DNA of 63,374 nucleotides, counting the filler, from Octopus bimaculoides (Eukaryota): the NCBI RefSeq assembly GCF_001194135.2. It is 3 parts of 2 records of this genome, joined end to end, with 100 filler letters (N's around TTAATTAATTAA, not from the genome) between each part and the next. Parts side by side here need not be neighbours in the genome. Positions count along the whole stretch, not along the records: positions 43,642 to 63,374 come from NC_068982.1; 2 more parts are not named here. One strand, 5' to 3'. Shown here piece after piece: positions 43,642 to 62,510 of the stretch. The translations under genes and the position numbers were made by a program. The notes under the pieces are model-generated. The model saw only the letters and a list, made by a program, of their open reading frames with translations, did no database searches and was not told the origin of the DNA. Each line of letters begins with the position of its first letter. Position 1 is the stretch's first letter.

Positions 43642-43677
<36 letters not shown>

Positions 43678-43758
43678 GTGTGTGTGTGTGTGTATAATTG
43701 TGTATATATATATCTTAGTATCTCAATCTCTTTATTTTCAGTAAAGGAAAGCAACACA

Positions 43759-44508
43759 ATGCCTAAACTTCTACCTTTGAAGCAGTCTGTTAGTGACCGT
43801 GTTGTTAGCCGCTTCCCAGTGAAACTTTGGCGGATCACTAATCATTGCCAGACTGGTGCTATTTCATGGGGAGCTGATGGCTGTTCTATTCGCATCAACA
43901 AGACTGATTTTGAAAGTCAGTATTTGGCTACATCTTTAAAACCATCATCACAGGGCTCAACAGCAGTTTCAACAGAGAACATACCCCAGAAATCACCATT
44001 TCTTTTGGTGCCAATGGCCTCTAATGAATCAGTATATTTCTGGTCTTTTAAAACCAAAAACTTTAGAAGCTTTATTCGTCAACTGAATATGTATGGTTTC
44101 CGCAAAATGTCACGGATATTAGCCAGTCGGAAAACAGAAAATAAAAAAGCTATATACCGAGGTGGTTATGATTCAGCAGTTGAACCTTGCAAATATACAC
44201 CAGAGAAGGTAAATTCCCAAGGACAAGATAGCAATGTCTCATCTAATCTTGTCAGCTATGATAAGATGGACTATTATGATCATGTACTGAACTCTGGTCA
44301 AGAGGAAGCTACTGACAAAAGACATTTGACTTATGAGTATTACCATCCTTTATTTCAAAGAGATCACCCAGAACTTCTTTACCAAATCCAAAGACCCAGG
44401 ACTAAGAAATCAAAAAATGATACTAGTGGACGTTTGGACACTGAAAACTTATGTGCTTTAGCTAAATGTGTTATTGAGGACAGCTTACTTTCAGGTCATC
44501 CATGGGAG
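43759..44508 (+). CDS. HSF-family transcription factor (HSF5/HSFY/HSFX-like), coding exon 1 with the whole DNA-binding domain
   Basis: RFPVKLW..ISWGADGCSIRINKTDFE..FKTKNFRSFIRQLNMYGFRKM..YEYYHPLFQRDHPELLYQIQR. Acceptor ctctttattttcag ends at 43741, ATG at 43759, donor GAG|gtaagg after 44508 (phase 0). Confidence 0.93.
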
Positions 44509-49076: not shown

Positions 49077-49281
49077 ATACCAAGCCGGAAGCCTTTGTGG
49101 CTAGAAAACAACTATAAACAGTCAAAAAACAATGAATCTGTAAATCAACAGCTGCAGAGTAAGATTAATTTACCAAAAGGTTCTCCATTTAACTACTTGA
49201 TCAATCAGAATTTACCTAAATTGACATGTGATGGGCTAAGACAGAATTCTGCAAATCAGTCATTATCCTCAAATAACACGG
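49077..49281 (+). CDS. HSF-like gene, coding exon 2
   Basis: ttcttctcatttacag|ATA CCA.. reads IPSRKPLWLENNYKQ..SLSSNNT G|gtaaat. Phase 0 in, phase 1 out, no stops. Confidence 0.75.
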
Positions 49282-49795: not shown

Positions 49796-49830
49796 GTCAC
49801 TGCTTGGAATCAAACTCGGANNNNNNNNNN

Positions 49831-49865
<35 letters not shown>

Positions 49866-49869
<4 letters not shown>

Positions 49870-52030
49870 CCTCGAGGACTATGATGAATAAAGAGTGGGG
49901 TTGGGTGAGGGCTGAGGACTGATCCTTGGCGAACCCCTACCCCTACCTGGAATTCTTCACTGTACTTATTGCCAACCATCACCTTACTGACAGTATCCCT
50001 GTACATGGCTTGCACAGCTCTCACTAACCATTCATCTATCCTTAGTTTCCTCATTGACCACCAGATAAGGATTGGGGGACCCTGTCAAAGGCTTTCTCCA
50101 TGTCAACAAAAGCCAGGTATGGAGGTTTATCTTTGGTTAGGCATTTCTCCTGCAGCTGTCTTACCAGAAATATAGCATCAGTGGTGCTTTTCCCTGGCAC
50201 GAACCCAAACTGCATCTCATCTAGACTGACTCTTTCCCTAATTAGTTGGGCTATGACCCTCTCCATGACCTTCATTACATGATCCAACAACTTATTACCT
50301 CTGTAATTATTTGTATCTAAAGCATCACCTTTACTTTTGTAGCAGTTGACTATGGTGCTGCTATACCAGTCATTGGCTATGACTCCTTCATGTATCATCT
50401 GGTTAACTATATGGGTGACTAGGCTATAGCCAACACTGCCAGATATTTTGAGCATATCTGCGGTGATTCCTGATGGGCCGGGGGCTTTCCCTGTCTTCAT
50501 ACTCTTAATTGCTTTATCTACCAAAGTACTGTCAATTCGGATAGCTGGTCCCTCTGTTGGGTCGGCATTTGACAGACTCTTTTTCTCCCATTCATTCTCT
50601 TTATTTAGCTACTTTTCATAGTGGCGTCTCCAAACCTCTCTCTTTGCAGCCTCGTTTAATGCAAGTGAACCATTATCCATGTGGACACATTTCTCTCCTA
50701 CGACATCATGATTCTCTCTCACACATTGTCTTGCAACACGAAATACCTTGTCTTTGGTCCTCACGGTGCAGAACATTGGCAAATTTTTTCTTATCTGCTT
50801 CCCCTCTGGCTAAATAAACCTGCCTCCTAGCTTCCCTTCTGGCAGTCTGATACAATTCCCTGCTACCACCGTTTTTCCAGTCCTTACAAGCCTGTTTCTT
50901 TTCCCTTATGGCCCTGTCAACAACATTGTTCCACCACCACATTACCTTGGGTCGAGAGGAGACTTTGCCCCATCCACAAATCTGGTCAGTGGCCCTCAGC
51001 AGGTTGTCCCATAGAAACCTCTAGTTGTCTTCCACATCATGTGATGCTATATCCCCCTTTATTTCATCAAAAGCTTTGAGTAATACGTTTCTAAATTTCT
51101 GTCCATTTGCAGGATCTTTTAGCTTCCAGACCCGTCTCCTCCATGCTGGTCGTCTTCTGGGCATCGATTTAGCCCTGATCCTGAAGTCACTAACTACTAG
51201 TCTATGTTGTAGGTACATTCTTCACCTGGGAAGGTTTTGGCATTTATAAGCAGCCATCTTTCCCTTTTCCTAGCAAGGATGTAGTTAATTTGGCTAGTGT
51301 GTCTACCAGATTAGTAGGTGACTAGGTGACTGGCAGGTTTCCTGAAATTAGTATTGCAAACCATGAGATCATTTGCATCACAGAACTCCAGCAACCTGGT
51401 TCCCTCCTCATTGCAGGAACCAAAACCATGGCCTCCATGTATGCCATAGAAGGCCCCTCCATGTTGTCCAACATGTCCATTGAAGTCACCAGCCACAAAG
51501 ATAAGGTCTCTGTTATTCTTCAATGAGGTAGTCAGCAAGAGGGTGTCATAAAATCGGTCTTTCTGTCCATCAGGTAGTCCCGGTTGAGGGGCATAGGCCG
51601 AGATAATGGTTGCTAACCCATGATGTAGCACTAATCTAATCTTAAGTATTCTATCGCAGACTCTGACTACCTCAATTACCTTATCAACCCATTTCTCCAC
51701 AAGAAGTATACCCATACCCCTGACCCCTTCAGTGTTCCCTGTCCAGAAAATCTTGTACTTATGCTCCTTGCTTTTGAGGAACCTAGCGGAACCTCCTCTC
51801 CATCTTACTTCTTGGATGCAGCACAAATCTACATGTTTCCATTCAAGTGTCTCAACAATCTCACCAGACCTATCTTTCAGTGTGCCCACATTGAGTGTGT
51901 CAACCCTGAGGCTGTCGGAGGTGTGGGCCTGTGAGACCCTGGGATGAGGGATAGCAGCGTCATACACCTGAAAAGAAAGCTTGCATTTGGCAGAATTCAT
52001 AAACAAACAATAGCCTTCAACCTGCATACA
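49866..52030 (-). mobile_element. RTE-clade LINE: APE endonuclease plus N-terminal RT, 3' part missing, inactivated
   Basis: TLNVGTL..IQEVRWRG..IISAYAPQ..GDFNGHVG..GTRLLEFC; KAPGPSGI..NYRG.KLL..QFGFVPGKSTTDAIF..FVDMEKAFDRVP..GVRQGSVLSP..LFIIVLEA. Stops and frameshifts between ORFs. Confidence 0.93.
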
Positions 52031-53445: not shown

Positions 53446-53587
53446 GTTATTTTCCCAGTGAAGCTGAACCAGGAATGGAGCTTTCTCTGAAGATCCCGAG
53501 GTTTAGTGAACCTGGTATTCAAACTCATCCTGATTATAGTAACTGCATTCAGTTTTGTATGTCACAGGCAGACAGTAAGAAATGCAG
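53446..53587 (+). CDS. HSF-like gene, coding exon 3
   Basis: ctgtttacgcag|GT TAT.. reads (G)YFPSEAEPGMELSLKIPRF..QADSKKC AG|gtaatt. Phase 1 in, phase 2 out. Confidence 0.75.
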
Positions 53588-54429: not shown

Positions 54430-56950
54430 CCATATTTCCATCTGTCTGAGGATTACACTGGACACTTTGAGCTGTATCCCTTAATTGTATGGGGTTCAGT
54501 GTCATAGTCTGCACACATTGCTCTCTTCCCCCTCCTCAACCTATTCCCGTATATCTGCAAATGCTGTTGGTAGCTATAGCAGGTGGCAAGTGGGTAAGGT
54601 GGACAGTCAGAGTAGGACAGTTGCTACTCCTCTGCATCTATTAGGGGGCTGGTATGTGACTCAGAAATAATTTAGAACAATTGATATTCCAGCTGAGTGA
54701 GGGTGTTGATGTTGCTGCCATTTCTGTGTATGTGTCCTTTATGTGTATGAATCCTTAGGCTGAAGGAGAGGGACAGTGACTTGGGATGTTGTTATAGTCA
54801 TGATTGAAGGTTCTGATACATGTCCGGGTGTTTGGAAGTGATTTTCATGTAGTGTCAGTGACCGAAGTGAGAAGTTTTCTCCAAAGAAAAACTCAAGCAG
54901 GTAGTTATTGATATTTTATTCTGTTGGCAAAAAGTTGTGTCTCTGGTTGCTCTGAGTATGTTTGCACATTGTTTTTCTTTCTTCACTTCATCTTCTCTAT
55001 TTGTTGGGAATCTTGTGGAGGAGGTGTATGTAACTCACAATATTTTTGTCTCTTGTGTGTATTGTATGTTTATGTTGTTGAGTTGAGTGTAATGGTTGGT
55101 TGTATTTGTTGTTCTCTGGTGTTGCTGGCAAGAAGCCTGACTGGATTTGATTGATGCTACTTTAAGTCTGTGAAGTCAAAGTTCTAAATGACTGAAATAG
55201 AGTTAGAGTTCTGCATTAGTGTTTGCAGATTGGTGGGAGGGTATAATGTTATCTGCCTAAGAGGCTGGTATTATGTTTGAAAAATTACAGATTCTGGAAG
55301 AAGACCAGTCCTACACAGCAGAAGTGTTAGGACTGCATCCCTTGGTGAAGAGGAGTGGTCTGCAAGAGTCCTGTGCCAGTGCCATGTAAAAAGCACTCAT
55401 GCCAGTACCATGTAAAAGCGCTCATGCTGGTGGCATGTTAAAAGTACCCAGCACACTCTGTAAAGTGTTTGGTGTTAGAAAGGGCATCCAGCCATAGAAA
55501 CCAGGCCAAATCAAACTGGAGCCTGGGGTAGCTCTCTGGCTTGTCAGCTCCAGCTAAACCATCCAACCCATGCAAGCATGAAAAATTGATATTAAAGGAG
55601 GATGATGATGATGATAATGATGATTGATCTTGTACACTATATAGGCTTAATGACTTGGCACATAGTTTGCTAGCAGTGTTTTGTGTTTTTTCTTATGGCA
55701 AGAAATTTTTGTGTATGTAAATAGTAGAGAATAGATTCATATTAATGTTGATGGCATTTACAATGGTATTTGTTGAGGCTTTTGTTGTTGAAGTCATCAT
55801 ATATTCTTTTTTGGTTTGTGATTAGTGTGATGATTTGAATCTATGTTTTGAGAGAGGATGGTGTATGGGTTTGTGAGGTCAAAGATTAGCCTTTCTAGAA
55901 TTTTTGAGGGTGTCCTAAGGAGTGTGAAGGGTCTGTATGATATTGCTTCATTGGGGTTTTTGACAAGATTTAGAATTGTTATAATTTTCCCAGATTCTAG
56001 GAATTTAGCAGTGTTTGTGAGAGTATTTGTGGATGCCAGTGAGTGCTGTGATTCCTTCATGCCTAGGTATTTTAGGTGTATATTTGTGATTTTGTCTGGC
56101 CCTGAGGCTTCTGAGTTTTTAAATTTCTTCATTGCTTTTTGGGTGCCTGTTAGAAACAGGCGTAGGGATAAAAGCATGGTGTAGGTGGAAGGTACACATT
56201 TTCTTTATTGTTATGTTCTTTATGTGGTTTACAAGGGTCATGTTTTGAAAAATGTCCAATTAGCTTTGTATTGCAGTGAGGATATTTTATTTGAGGGTGT
56301 TACATTGATATTGTGTAATATGATCAATGTTCTTTTACTGTTAGTTCTGTGTGTGATTTATATTGGATACAAATACTTGCTACTTTTTTCCTGTGGTTTA
56401 TTATTTCCTAATTTAATTGTCTAATGCAGGGTTTTGGTTGTATGTGGTTTTAACATATTTTCTTTTGAAGTTGTCTTTAGTTTTTATGAGGTTTTCAATT
56501 TCTGATGCATAAATGTGGTTGTATTCTTTTTCATCGATTGTGGGATTTAATTTTTTAAATGTGTCTATAATTATTTCGTTGAATGTATGTCTTTCAGTGT
56601 GTATGTGGGGATATGATGTTATTGAATTTTGATAAAATTTGATCCTGTTTTTTTTTTTTTTGTAGAATTCGTTCCATTTTGCTTTTTTGAAATTTATGAA
56701 AGTGTATCGTGGTGATAATAAGCAGATTGTCTTTGGAAAGTTGGAGAGTCATTTGCCTAGTGGTTATGGTAACTAGGAGTTTGTGTGTGGAACAGAAAGT
56801 AATCTGGGAAAGAGTTGGTCTAGTTGACTTTGTGCGGTATGTGTGGGTCATTTAGCATATAAAGGCTGTTCAGATACCCTCTTATTTTCTGTACCATTTA
56901 AAAACTAGGAGGTACTGAGGGTATTTCAATCTCCCTCAATGATGATGTTT
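54430..56950 (-). mobile_element. Heavily decayed I/Jockey-like LINE ORF2, interrupted by a SINE at about 55300-55625
   Basis: AMKKFKNSEASGPDKITNIHLKYL..SYRPFTLLRTPSKILERL (RT N-terminus), an endonuclease-end remnant near 56600-56850, and C-terminal CADYDTEPHTIK..CP near 54450-54520. Confidence 0.65.
55300..55625 (+). mobile_element. SINE family D with an internal ~27-bp tandem repeat and (GAT)n tail
   Basis: Three gccagtgccatgtaaaaagcactcat-like units; ggtgttagaaagggcatccagcc..aacccatgcaagcatg..gatgatgatgat. Confidence 0.75.
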
Positions 56951-57620
56951 AACACTGAGGTCTGTATGTTGTTGGTTTTTATTTCAGGCTAGCATTTCTA
57001 GGGCAATATCATATTGTTAGTTTGTGATATCTGTAAATTAAATACAAAATCTTATGTAAGTTATATCACAATCAACTCTGTCAGAAAAGGTTCTCTCTAG
57101 TTTAATCAGCGTACAGTTTGTAATGGAAAGTGCTTTACTATTAGTTTCAAGAATGTTTTTTTAATTATTGCTATATATGTAGGAGAGTATTGTAGTTCGT
57201 TAGAAGCATTGTGTATTGTTTGTAAAGAATAAAAAGTTTTGAATGTTTATATAGTGAGTGATAGAAGTGAAAAGGATAGTTTAAAATATTTATATAATGT
57301 ACCAATGGGGTGAAAAGGTATGTTTGTGATATGTTTACAGTTATTGTATAGCCCCATGTCAGTTCTGGTTGATCAGACTTAGTATCAGAGGTATTCCAAC
57401 CATGAAAATTCCATCTTTTCCTAATGTGCTGGGAATCGAGATTTACATTATCTAATGTGTCTCTTTTTAAGATGGAAGGTGTGATTTAATGGAAGGGAGT
57501 TGGGTGTTATTTCTAGCAGGTTGAGAGATCATGTAGAGGTTCCCTTGTTGGCTTGTTTACACAGTGTGTGGTAGTGGTGAAGAAAAGGACTGGTTAAACT
57601 ATTTATGAAATGTGTGGTAG

Positions 57621-57652
<32 letters not shown>

Positions 57653-60481: not shown

Positions 60482-60551
60482 ATCTGATAAAGAACCAGTG
60501 TTTGAAAATACTTTGAACAATAATGACTCTGGAACTGGATTTAACAAAGAA
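60482..60551 (+). CDS. HSF-like gene, coding exon 4
   Basis: ttttgaccttttccag|A TCT.. reads (R)SDKEPVFENTLNNNDSGTGFNKE|gtaaga. Phase 2 in, phase 0 out. Confidence 0.7.
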
Positions 60552-61720: not shown

Positions 61721-62103
61721 CATAGGTGGTATCAAAAAGTTCCTGGACTAGTTCTGTCACATGCCAACAGATGGCAGCATATGGTTGCATGTGCATTGAG
61801 AGCTAGCAGTGACTTTCATGAAGCAGTATCTAAGTAACATTGCAGTGTTTACATCACAAATTGTGAAATATGTGGTTTTTTGATCACATGTATGCTGTAA
61901 TCTGCAATTTTGTCATGGACAGGAAGTTGGAATAAAGATCCACTGTGAAATTTTGTGTTAAACTTGGTAAGTCTGTTACAGAGACATTGAGCATGCTTTG
62001 GCATGCTTATGGCGATGAGGCAATGGGTCATATGCAATGTTTCAAGTGGCATGGGTGCTTCAAAAGTAGAAGAACATCCCTGGAAGATGATGAGCGATCT
62101 GGA
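61721..62103 (+). mobile_element. Mariner 5' end (TIR plus N-terminal HTH), cut by (TA)n and a gap
   Basis: ggtggtatcaaaaagttcctggact terminus; MDRKLE*RSTVKFCVKLGKSVTETLSML..AYGDEAM..CFKWH..FKSRRTSLEDDERSG. Confidence 0.85.
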
Positions 62104-62510
62104 AATATATATATATATATATATATATATANNNNNNNNNNNNNNNNNNNNNNNNNNNNNNNNNNNNNNNNNNNNNNNNNNNNNNNNNNNNNNNNNNNNN
62201 NNNNNNNNNNNNNNNNNNNNNNNNNNNNNNNNNNNNNNNNNNNNNNNNNNNNNNNNNNNNNNNNNNNNNNNNNNNNNNNNNNNNNNNNNNNNNNNNNNNN
62301 NNNNNNNNNNNNNNNNNNNNNNNNNNNNNNNNNNNNNNNNNNNNNNNNNNNNNNNNNNNNNNNNNNNNNNNNNNNNNNNNNNNNNNNNNNNNNNNNNNNN
62401 NNNNNNNNNNNNNNNNNNNNNNNNNNNNNNNNNNNNNNNNNNNNNNNNNNNNNNNNNNNNNNNNNNNNNNNNNNNNNNNNNNNNNNNNNNNNNNNNNNNN
62501 NNNNNNNNAG

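What the first reader, a model, noticed from the sequence alone, without database searches (positions are those of the whole stretch)
43813..44394. HSF DNA-binding domain stretched by two giant insertions
Seen: every HSF core element is intact and in frame: FPVKLW, ISW..G..I.IN...FE, FKTKNFRSFIRQLNMYGFRK and EYYHP.F.R....L..I.R. About 40 residues separate L56 from F97 (43924-44047) and about 74 residues follow GFRKM (44110-44331). Established: canonical HSF1 has only a few residues at the first site and roughly 20 in the wing loop. The FPxKLW and FKT signature is that of the HSF5/HSFY/HSFX branch, known in vertebrates as germ-line regulators. Inference: this is a divergent invertebrate member whose expanded turn and wing could alter DNA specificity or partner binding.
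Basis: partly seen in the sequence, partly recalled or inferred. Interest (0 to 1): 0.7.

Follow-up and report, generated by a model that had tools for sequence, protein, structure and literature searches.

The report
Octopus HSF5-like factor with expanded loops
This is the first coding exon of an annotated but unstudied Octopus bimaculoides gene for an HSF5-like transcription factor. Its DNA-binding domain carries two long loops that are translated, probably disordered and specific to cephalopods, an extreme form of a feature already described for vertebrate HSF5.

Summary
Window 43759-44508 (+) is one open 250-codon exon. It encodes an HSF-type DNA-binding domain (Pfam PF00447, E=3.5e-19) with every core block intact. 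40 residues (43927-44046) sit between L56 and F97, and 74 residues (44110-44331) sit between GFRKM and YEYYHP.

The exon product is identical to residues 1-250 of Octopus bimaculoides LOC106867489 (XP_014767860.1, 575 aa, "uncharacterized").

Both inserts look translated:
- They are open and in frame in O. sinensis, O. vulgaris, a further Octopus sp., Argonauta hians and a distant unidentified lineage, most likely cephalopod (clade X).
- Within-clade dN/dS is 0.15-0.27, against 0-0.02 for the core.
- They show no indels where the adjacent intron has 15.
- No convincing internal splice sites exist, and no gene model splices them out.

AlphaFold2 gives pLDDT above 90 for the core and below 50 for both inserts. 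The best sequence and fold match is the human HSF5 domain (8ZYS). In a neighbour-joining tree the protein groups with vertebrate HSF5 (98% bootstrap), apart from HSF1 and HSF2.

Among 145 nearest relatives the two loops have median lengths of 6 and 24 residues; here they are 40 and 82. Others reach 49 and 84, so this is extreme but not unique. Loop function is untested. Verdict: a new member of a known kind, of modest interest.

The parts
43742..44508 (+). First coding exon of Octopus bimaculoides LOC106867489. The acceptor is ttttcag|t at 43741/43742, the ATG is at 43759 and the donor is GAG|gtaagg at 44508/44509. It encodes aa 1-250.
   Evidence: The product is identical to XP_014767860.1 residues 1-250. 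O. sinensis isoform X1 reads into the same acceptor from an upstream exon. The donor is shared with the orthologous loci L001, L004 and L005.
43807..43926 (+). DNA-binding domain core block 1 (aa 17-56): SRFPVKLW helix 1, the two ISW/SIRIN strands and the start of helix 2 (DFESQYL).
   Evidence: Pfam. Aligns to HSF5 8ZYS residues 9-60. pLDDT 91-93. dN = 0 within Octopus.
43927..44046 (+). Insert 1 (aa 57-96, 40 residues), placed between helix 2 and the recognition helix. It is S/T/P-rich, with a hydrophobic end (SPFLLVPMASNESVYFWS).
   Evidence: It is 85% identical in Argonauta, 19 aa long in clade X, and the family median is 6. dN/dS is 0.15 (Octopus pair). pLDDT is below 50 for most of it, except 91-96.
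44047..44109 (+). Core block 2 (aa 97-117): FKTKNFRSFIRQLNMYGFRKM, the recognition helix, including the conserved Arg107.
   Evidence: S104, R107, Y112 and G113 are invariant across 150 relatives. pLDDT 94.
44110..44331 (+). Insert 2 (aa 118-191, 74 residues) at the wing position. The first third is basic (+4) and the last third is acidic (-3).
   Evidence: It is 64% identical in Argonauta (80 aa there) and 75-76 aa but unalignable in clade X. dN/dS is 0.35 (Octopus pair) and 0.13 (clade X pair). pLDDT is about 45-48.
44332..44400 (+). Core block 3 (aa 192-214): YEYYHPLFQRDHPELLYQIQRPR, the last strands and the end of the domain.
   Evidence: pLDDT 91-94.
44434..44508 (+). Conserved motif after the domain, LDTENLCALAKCVIEDSLLSGHPWE (aa 226-250), predicted as a helix over 228-245.
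   Evidence: 25/25 identical in Argonauta. 20/25 identical in clade X, and dN = 0 within both clades. Helix in the AF2 model, pLDDT about 65. No matching sequence seen after the domain in the bivalve, gastropod or vertebrate relatives inspected.
49077..49281 (+). Coding exon 2 (aa 251-319, IPSRKPLWLENNYK...SSNNTG).
   Evidence: tblastn of XP_014767860.1 against the piece. AG|/|GT boundaries read.
53446..53587 (+). Coding exon 3 (aa about 319-366, YFPSEAEPG...SKKC).
60482..60551 (+). Coding exon 4 (aa about 366-390, RSDKEPVFENTL...FNKE). The remaining roughly 185 residues were not found in the piece. They may lie beyond 63374 or in the N-run near 62.1-62.5 kb.

Best explanation
The region is the first coding exon of Octopus bimaculoides LOC106867489. 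This gene encodes a 575-residue transcription factor whose only recognisable domain is an HSF-type winged helix-turn-helix DNA-binding domain of the HSF5-like class.

Shown here:
- The core of the domain is intact and under very strong purifying selection. This covers helix 1, the strands, the recognition helix SFIRQLNMYGFRK with its conserved Arg, and the closing YEYYHPLFQRDHPELL block.
- Both long segments are translated parts of the protein. They are weakly to moderately constrained and are predicted to be disordered surface loops.
- The protein has no HR-A/B-type heptad region.
- It groups with vertebrate HSF5, apart from HSF1 and HSF2.

Inferred:
- Like mammalian HSF5, the protein most likely binds short GAA-containing elements through the unchanged recognition helix, without obligate trimerisation.
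- The two loops probably do not read bases. More likely they act as flexible regulatory or docking segments. Candidates are phosphorylation-prone S/T-rich stretches, a basic arm next to GFRK that could touch the DNA backbone, and an acidic Tyr-rich tail. Such segments would tune affinity, spacing between neighbouring bound domains, or partner recruitment.
- By analogy with HSF5 and HSFY, a germ-line role is possible. Nothing here tests it.
For: Identity: the exon product equals XP_014767860.1 residues 1-250, and downstream exons 2-4 of that model map in the piece with GT-AG borders.

Domain: PF00447 at E=3.5e-19. The best solved-structure sequence match is human HSF5 8ZYS (E=3.5e-10, against 7e-8 for Drosophila HSF and 1e-5 for HSF1). 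The AF2 core has pLDDT above 90. The Foldseek top hits are 8ZYS chains, with TM 0.84-0.88 normalised to the target.

Inserts translated and constrained:
- The frame is open in O. sinensis, O. vulgaris, Octopus sp. L005, Argonauta hians (insert 1 85% identical, insert 2 64% identical) and three clade X sequences.
- Nei-Gojobori dN/dS for the inserts is 0.27 (O. bimaculoides vs L005; Fisher p=0.005) and 0.15 (X1 vs X4; p=6e-8). The core gives 0 and 0.02.
- Insert DNA is 94.4% identical with no indels. The adjacent intron is 87.3% identical with 15 indel runs in 880 nt.
- The only indel within a clade is a single codon.
- No internal GT..AG pair has both a good donor and a pyrimidine-rich acceptor.

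Class:
- In the NJ tree, cephalopods form a clade (98%) inside a protostome clade that holds proteins named HSF5-like or HSFY-like (86%). That clade joins vertebrate HSF5 (98%) to the exclusion of HSF1 and HSF2.
- There is no PF06546 hit.
- The best 42-residue heptad score is 0.57, against 1.0-1.2 for the HSF1 and HSF2 controls.

Precedent: mouse HSF5 has a disordered insertion between helix 2 and the recognition helix, a wing replaced by a predicted disordered region, no HR-A/B, and a motif with a single GAA triplet (PMC11059408; PMC11417359).

Polarity: the basic-then-acidic charge pattern of the wing insert is kept in Octopus (+4/-1/-3), Argonauta (+3/-1/-4) and clade X (+4/-2/-3), although the sequences cannot be aligned.
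Against: - No transcript, protein or DNA-binding data were available. Translation of the inserts is inferred from evolution and from gene models whose evidence I could not inspect.
- The disorder call rests on an alignment in which only four sequences cover the inserts, so low pLDDT may partly reflect shallow depth.
- Between the two deep lineages the inserts are unalignable (dN about 1.2), so any function is not tied to a conserved sequence.
- Clade X has SFVRQ, not the HSF5-type SFIRQ.
- The tree is neighbour-joining on 102 columns. It lacks HSFY, HSFX, HSF3, HSF4 and a canonical molluscan HSF1.
- The species behind clade X could not be identified.
Confidence: 0.8

Rival explanations
1. The loops are tolerated expansions with no function of their own. 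They would be passive disordered spacers that drifted longer in cephalopods because these two sites of the HSF fold accept any length.
For: Both sites vary across the family. Among 145 relatives the lengths range from about 3 to 49 and from 13 to 84. The inserts are unalignable between octopods and clade X. pLDDT is below 50. Their dN/dS is an order of magnitude above the core. Long wings arose separately in Gordionus (75) and in a fish HSF5-like protein (64).
Against: dN/dS is significantly below 1 in two independent clades. Insert 1 is 85% identical between Octopus and Argonauta, above exons 3-4 and the C-terminal rest of the protein (65-75%). There are no indels, whereas the intron has many. 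Wing length (74-80 aa) and charge polarity are kept across the deep split.
Confidence: 0.25
2. The expanded turn and wing directly change which DNA sequence is read, giving a new base specificity.
For: Insert 1 lies immediately before the recognition helix. The first third of the wing insert is basic (+4) and adjoins GFRK. Mouse HSF5, which has a smaller insertion at the same place, prefers a single GAA unit rather than the trimeric heat shock element (PMC11059408).
Against: The recognition helix and its conserved Arg are unchanged. From established knowledge of HSF-DNA co-crystal structures (Littlefield and Nelson 1999), the wing does not contact DNA (not tested here). The loops are predicted disordered and diverge fast, which fits poorly with base-specific readout.
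Confidence: 0.12
3. One or both inserts are introns inside the exon and are spliced out of the mature mRNA. The real protein would then have near-canonical loops.
For: A fair donor-like site, AAG|GTAAAT, lies at 44209. In-frame, stop-free AG partners exist, for example at 44337 (129 nt). No transcript data could be examined here.
Against: The candidate acceptors have weak pyrimidine tracts, and no pair spans a whole insert cleanly. The frame is open in every orthologue, dN/dS is below 1 and there are no indels. RefSeq models for O. bimaculoides and O. sinensis (including its two listed isoforms), and the O. vulgaris and Argonauta models, all keep the exon whole.
Confidence: 0.05
4. The gene is a decaying duplicate whose DNA-binding domain no longer works.
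For: The domain is interrupted by 114 extra residues. Pfam matches it only as two stretches.
Against: Core dN/dS is 0-0.02. All family-invariant residues are present. The 575-aa frame is kept from Octopus to Argonauta.
Confidence: 0.02

Closest known systems
Vertebrate HSF5 (human DNA-binding domain structure 8ZYS; mouse studies PMC11059408 and PMC11417359)
   Same: - It is the best sequence and fold match and the sister group in the tree.
- It shares the FPxKLW start and the SFIRQ recognition-helix variant.
- It has an extra segment between helix 2 and the recognition helix, and a degenerate wing.
- It lacks HR-A/B.
- The rest of the protein is long and low in complexity.
   Different: - The octopus loops are about 19 and about 58 residues longer than in human HSF5.
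- The conserved vertebrate post-domain motif (LTSANKAKLAAGLEV) is replaced by a cephalopod-specific helix, LDTENLCALAKCVIEDSLLSG.
- Expression and function in octopus are unknown.
Protostome proteins named HSF5-like or HSFY-like (scorpion XP, mite, ant and wasp, bivalve Sinanodonta KAL3858923.1, gastropod Gigantopelta)
   Same: They fall in the same clade (86% bootstrap). They share FPxKLW, GAISW and FKT..SFIRQLN.YGFRK, and they have no Vert_HS_TF domain.
   Different: Most have consensus-length loops, about 6 and about 24 residues. The long loops are therefore a cephalopod-lineage gain, not a molluscan trait.
Gordionus sp. XP_065315137.1 and unnamed relatives P0071, P0120 and P0032
   Same: These are independent cases of the same two sites being expanded. 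Gordionus has 23 and 75 residues, P0071 has 49 and 42, and P0120 has 42 and 34.
   Different: Their insert sequences are unrelated and their lineages are different or unknown. Among the 145, only the cephalopod sequences (40/82 in Octopus, 19/84 in clade X) and Gordionus (23/75) combine a wing gap above 70 with an enlarged first loop.
Canonical HSF1 and HSF2
   Same: They share the fold and the recognition-helix chemistry.
   Different: HSF1 and HSF2 have short loops and an HR-A/B trimerisation region directly after the domain (heptad score 1.0-1.2 against 0.57). They form a separate clade.

Membership tests
HSF-type DNA-binding domain family (Pfam PF00447) | Profile match above the curated gathering score | tested here: met
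   69.6 bits against a cut-off of 22, E=3.5e-19, in two stretches split by the inserts.
HSF-type DNA-binding domain family (Pfam PF00447) | Winged helix-turn-helix fold of the HSF type | tested here: met
   The AF2 core has pLDDT above 90. All 50 listed Foldseek hits are HSF or Skn7 DNA-binding domains, and the top target-normalised TM is 0.84-0.88.
HSF-type DNA-binding domain family (Pfam PF00447) | Recognition helix SF[VI]RQLN.YGF.K with the DNA-contacting Arg | tested here: met
   SFIRQLNMYGFRK lies at aa 104-116. S104, R107, Y112 and G113 are invariant in 150 relatives.
HSF-type DNA-binding domain family (Pfam PF00447) | Binds nGAAn-type elements | not testable with these tools
   This needs EMSA, SELEX or CUT&Tag.
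HSF5-like (non-canonical) subfamily | Groups with vertebrate HSF5 rather than with HSF1, HSF2 or HSF4 | tested here: met
   NJ tree on 102 core columns: the combined clade with vertebrate HSF5 has 98% bootstrap and excludes vertebrate HSF2, nematode HSF1 and human HSF1. HSFY, HSFX, HSF3, HSF4 and a canonical molluscan HSF were not sampled.
HSF5-like (non-canonical) subfamily | No HR-A/B or HR-C heptad repeats | tested here: met
   There is no PF06546 or other Pfam hit in the full 575 aa. A crude 42-residue heptad scan scores 0.57, against 1.02-1.20 for the HSF1 and HSF2 positive controls. The only helix after the domain is 18 residues long. No dedicated coiled-coil predictor was available.
HSF5-like (non-canonical) subfamily | Extra segment between helix 2 and the recognition helix, and a poorly conserved or disordered wing | tested here: met
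   The segments are 40 and 74 residues, with pLDDT below 50. The feature is described for mouse HSF5 in PMC11059408.
HSF5-like (non-canonical) subfamily | Ile in SFIRQ instead of Val | tested here: inconclusive
   It is present in the four octopod species (Octopus and Argonauta) but is SFVRQ in clade X. Within cephalopods it is therefore not diagnostic.
HSF5-like (non-canonical) subfamily | Germ-line (male meiotic) expression and function | not testable with these tools
   No expression data could be reached. This needs tissue RNA-seq or in situ hybridisation.
One-to-one orthologue of vertebrate HSF5 (as opposed to HSFY or HSFX) | Resolved position relative to HSFY and HSFX | not tested
   No tool-derived vertebrate HSFY or HSFX sequence was in the tree. 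Database names among the neighbours are mixed (HSF5-like, HSFY-like, HSF2-like, SFL1-like).

The most novel reading that the evidence does not exclude
The long wing would be an ancient functional module maintained across cephalopods. It is about 75-80 residues long, its basic-to-acidic polarity is kept although the sequence is unalignable, and it is under purifying selection in two deep lineages. Together with the cephalopod-specific post-domain helix, it might take the place of the missing HR-A/B region in controlling self-association or partner docking. More broadly, the HSF5 lineage would date back to the bilaterian ancestor instead of being the vertebrate innovation that reviews describe, so that 'invertebrates have a single HSF' does not hold for molluscs, arachnids, Hymenoptera and nematomorphs.
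Probability: 0.2. Interest if true: 0.55.

Novelty: new member of a known kind. Interest (0 to 1): 0.3.

Why it matters
HSF5 has only recently been shown to be an atypical regulator of male meiosis that does not respond to heat shock. Reviews treat it as a vertebrate factor and describe most invertebrates as having one HSF (PMC12366260).

This locus shows a clear HSF5-like paralogue in cephalopods and in other protostomes. It also shows how far the two variable sites of the HSF fold can stretch while the core stays under near-absolute constraint.

That gives a natural series of loop lengths for testing what the HSF5 insertion and degenerate wing do. It also gives a candidate germ-line regulator to look at in octopus. 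It does not reveal a new kind of domain or mechanism.

Tried and rejected
- The single-sequence word-indexed search found only one close relative. The exhaustive representative search was needed to find the annotated Octopus protein.
- Look-up of the O. sinensis protein's DNA failed because it is not on record. dN/dS within Octopus therefore used the Logan contig L005.
- I tried to identify the species behind clade X by searching papers for the run accessions (no paper) and by searching with P0162 (no named relative). L004 has no other usable ORF. Clade X remains unidentified.
- The first bootstrap script timed out. It was redone with 65 taxa and numpy distances.
- Internal splicing: all 306 in-frame, stop-free GT..AG pairs inside the exon were ranked. 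None combines a good donor with a pyrimidine-rich acceptor or spans a whole insert cleanly.
- Transposon or repeat origin of the inserts: there are no tandem repeats in the exon and no significant blastn or tblastn match elsewhere in the piece. This origin was rejected as far as 19 kb of sequence allows.
- Shared post-domain motif with vertebrate HSF5 or with other molluscs: not seen.
- Literature on HSF5 in molluscs: only two incidental mentions.

Full report
**What is in the sequence**

Window 43759-44508 on the + strand is a single open stretch of 250 codons. It starts 17 nt after a splice-acceptor-like ttttcag| at 43741 and ends at a GAG|gtaagg donor at 44508/44509.
- FPVKLW at 43813-43830;
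- L56 at 43924-43926;
- FKTKNFRSFIRQLNMYGFRKM at 44047-44109;
- YEYYHPLFQRDHPELLYQIQRPR at 44332-44400.

Exactly 40 residues (43927-44046) separate L56 from F97. Exactly 74 residues (44110-44331) separate GFRKM from YEYYHP.

This is not a chance frame. None of 20,000 random 750-nt windows of the adjacent intron was stop-free. Pfam PF00447 (HSF_DNA-bind) matches at 69.6 bits against a cut-off of 22 (E=3.5e-19), split into two stretches by the inserts.

**Which gene it is**

An exhaustive phmmer search of 1.84 billion representatives found a 575-residue protein that is 99% identical over residues 1-250. Its cluster holds:
- XP_014767860.1, "uncharacterized protein LOC106867489 [Octopus bimaculoides]" (UniProt A0A0L8I0E5, "HSF-type DNA-binding domain-containing protein");
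- the O. sinensis LOC118762159 isoforms;
- an O. vulgaris model.

The window's product is identical to the O. bimaculoides protein over residues 1-250, so the piece is O. bimaculoides.

Exons 2, 3 and 4 of that model map at 49077-49281, 53446-53587 and 60482-60551 with GT-AG borders. The last 185 or so residues were not found in the piece. O. sinensis isoform X1 enters the same acceptor at 43742 from an upstream exon that is not in the piece.

The full-length protein has no other Pfam domain.

**Are the inserts really protein?**

This was the main way the finding could fail. No transcript data could be reached, so the test is evolutionary.

(a) Every related sequence keeps both segments open and in frame. 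These are O. sinensis, O. vulgaris, an Octopus sp. from Logan contigs (L005), Argonauta hians (P0181, 83% identical overall) and three sequences of a much more distant lineage, which I call clade X. Clade X comprises P0001/L001, P0160/L007 and P0162/L004, 45-53% identical to the window. The Logan and ENA contigs read through the same GTAAG donor, so they are genomic DNA.

(b) Between Octopus and Argonauta, insert 1 is 85% identical and insert 2 is 64% identical with a six-residue length difference. Exons 3-4 and the C-terminal rest of the protein are 65-75% identical, and exon 2 is 80%.

(c) Nei-Gojobori estimates within clades are as follows.

| Pair | Inserts dN/dS | Fisher p | Core dN/dS |
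|---|---|---|---|
| O. bimaculoides vs L005 | 0.27 (9.5 nonsynonymous, 9.5 synonymous changes) | 0.005 | 0 |
| Clade X, X1 vs X4 | 0.15 | 6e-8 | 0.02 |

(d) Insert DNA is 94.4% identical between the two Octopus species with no indel. The first 880 nt of the adjacent intron are 87.3% identical with 15 indel runs. The only indel inside an insert within a clade is one whole codon.

(e) I ranked all 306 in-frame, stop-free GT..AG pairs inside the exon. The best donor is AAG|GTAAAT at 44209. Its possible acceptors have poor pyrimidine tracts, and no pair spans a whole insert cleanly.

(f) None of the gene models I could see for four species splices the inserts out.

(g) The inserts are not tandem repeats and have no copy elsewhere in the piece.

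I conclude that both inserts are translated and under purifying selection. That selection is weaker than on the core.

**How unusual are the lengths?**

I measured the same two intervals in 145 of the 150 nearest representatives that carry all four anchor residues.

| Interval | Median | 95th percentile | Octopus | Largest others |
|---|---|---|---|---|
| L56 to F97 | 6 | 19 | 40 | 49, 42, 37 |
| K116 to F199 | 24 | 59 | 82 | clade X 84; Gordionus 75; a fish HSF5-like 64 |

The octopus protein is therefore at the top of both distributions. Only it, clade X (19/84) and Gordionus (23/75) combine a wing gap above 70 with an enlarged first loop. Neither expansion is without precedent.

Other molluscs have loops of about consensus length (a bivalve and several gastropods). 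The expansions are therefore a cephalopod-lineage gain. Clade X has the long wing (75-76 residues) but only 19 residues at the first site. Octopus and Argonauta share the 39-40 residue version, which suggests the wing expansion is older than the full first-site expansion.

Relative to solved structures, the octopus protein has about 36 and 59 residues more than human HSF1. It has about 19 and 58 more than human HSF5.

**Structure**

AlphaFold2 was run with a 35-sequence alignment. It gives pLDDT 91-94 for the three core blocks and 43-50 for both inserts. Helix 2 is split around insert 1 (helices 48-60 and 91-94). An additional helix lies at 228-245, after the domain.

Foldseek against the PDB returns only HSF and Skn7 DNA-binding domains. 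The six chains of 8ZYS (human HSF5 domain on DNA) are all among the top 14 hits, with target-normalised TM of 0.84-0.88.

The 8ZYS construct has 129 residues, of which 90-95 are modelled. This would fit its own loops being disordered in the crystal, but I did not check which residues are missing.

The disorder call for the octopus inserts is weak, because only four sequences in the alignment cover them.

**Which branch of the family?**

- The best solved-structure sequence match is HSF5.
- A profile search returned vertebrate "heat shock factor protein 5", arthropod "HSF5-like" and "HSFY-like", and a gastropod "HSFY-like" as the best named relatives. HSF2 followed about 20 bits lower.
- I built a neighbour-joining tree on 102 core columns with 200 bootstraps.
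  - The cephalopods form one clade (98%).
  - That clade sits inside a protostome clade (86%).
  - The protostome clade joins vertebrate HSF5 (98%) to the exclusion of vertebrate HSF2, nematode HSF1 and human HSF1.
- The protein has no Vert_HS_TF domain.
- A crude heptad scan scores 0.57, against 1.02-1.20 at the HR-A/B of the positive controls.

I could not separate HSF5 from HSFY and HSFX, because no tool-derived HSFY or HSFX sequence was available.

**What is already known**

Mouse HSF5 is described as having an insertion between helix 2 and the recognition helix that corresponds to a predicted disordered region. Its wing is poorly conserved and replaced by disorder. It carries SFIRQ instead of SFVRQ, has no HR-A/B, and prefers a motif with a single GAA triplet. 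It is essential for male meiotic prophase (PMC11059408; PMC11417359; review PMC12366260).

The octopus protein is thus an exaggerated version of a described architecture, not a new one.

The literature I could search treats HSF5 as a vertebrate factor and says most invertebrates have a single HSF. I found essentially nothing on HSF5 in molluscs. The protostome clade seen here is visible in database names but appears undiscussed.

**How it most likely works**

Shown: the recognition helix is intact and strongly constrained, the fold is that of HSF, there is no trimerisation region, and the loops are translated and constrained.

Inferred: the protein binds GAA-type elements through the unchanged recognition helix, as HSF5 does. 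The loops are flexible surface segments that modulate rather than read.

Points that fit a modulatory role:
- The wing insert keeps a basic first third (+4, +3, +4) and an acidic last third (-3, -4, -3) in Octopus, Argonauta and clade X, although the sequences are unalignable.
- Insert 1 is rich in Ser, Thr and Pro.
- The hydrophobic end of insert 1 (SPFLLVPM.SNESVYFWS) is nearly invariant between Octopus and Argonauta.

A purely passive-spacer reading remains a serious rival (I give it 0.25). A direct change of base specificity is less likely (0.12). Splicing-out (0.05) and pseudogene decay (0.02) are unlikely.

**Verdict**

The object is a new, uncharacterised member of a known kind, with loop lengths at the extreme of the family's range. 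Interest is modest (0.3). It would rise if the wing proved to be a functional module, or if the deep origin of the HSF5 lineage were established with full paralogue sampling.

Noticed in passing
window 44434-44508 (aa 226-250): A motif after the domain, LDTENLCALAKCVIEDSLLSGHPWE, is 25/25 identical between Octopus and Argonauta and 20/25 identical in clade X, with dN=0 within both clades. It is predicted as an 18-residue helix. No matching sequence was seen after the domain in the bivalve, gastropod or vertebrate HSF5-like proteins inspected. It sits where canonical HSFs begin HR-A.
   Followed up: partly
window 49797-52027, minus strand (intron 2 of the gene): A degraded non-LTR retrotransposon. 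One ORF has endonuclease/exonuclease/phosphatase similarity (51311-52027; E=3.5e-5, 24.1 bits, just under the 24.5 cut-off). Another matches reverse transcriptase RVT_1 (50051-50524, E=2.4e-10). They are broken into several frames and interrupted by a short N run near 49.83 kb.
   Followed up: partly
window 61945-62130, plus strand: An ORF fragment matches the HTH_48 domain of Mos1-type mariner transposases (E=7e-7). It is cut off by a long run of N (about 62.13-62.5 kb).
   Followed up: partly
window 43642-43693; also about 57.68-57.9 kb and 62.1-62.5 kb: (AT)16 and (TG)8 microsatellites lie directly upstream of the exon. Several N runs (assembly gaps) are flanked by (TA)n.
   Followed up: no
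window about 49161-49281 (3' part of exon 2): The O. vulgaris gene model (CAI9717048.1, 534 aa) lacks the 41 residues KINLPKG...SSNNTG that the O. bimaculoides, O. sinensis and Argonauta models keep. This is either an alternative donor inside exon 2 or an annotation difference.
   Followed up: no
related proteins: HSF5-like proteins (FPxKLW, no heptad region) occur in bivalves, gastropods, arachnids, Hymenoptera and a nematomorph, under inconsistent database names (HSF5-like, HSFY-like, HSF2-like, SFL1-like). Reviews describe most invertebrates as having a single HSF.
   Followed up: partly
window 54642-57641: GC skew is strongly positive (0.27-0.44) with negative AT skew over about 3 kb of intron 3. 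The cause was not examined.
   Followed up: no
P0009 (Ara ararauna KAM9023155.1) and P0010; P0008 (Thraustotheca clavata): Some hits carry two or more HSF-type domains in one predicted protein. The macaw model is flagged low quality and repeats its HSF5 domain. The oomycete protein has multiple tandem HSF domains (11 matched stretches).
   Followed up: no
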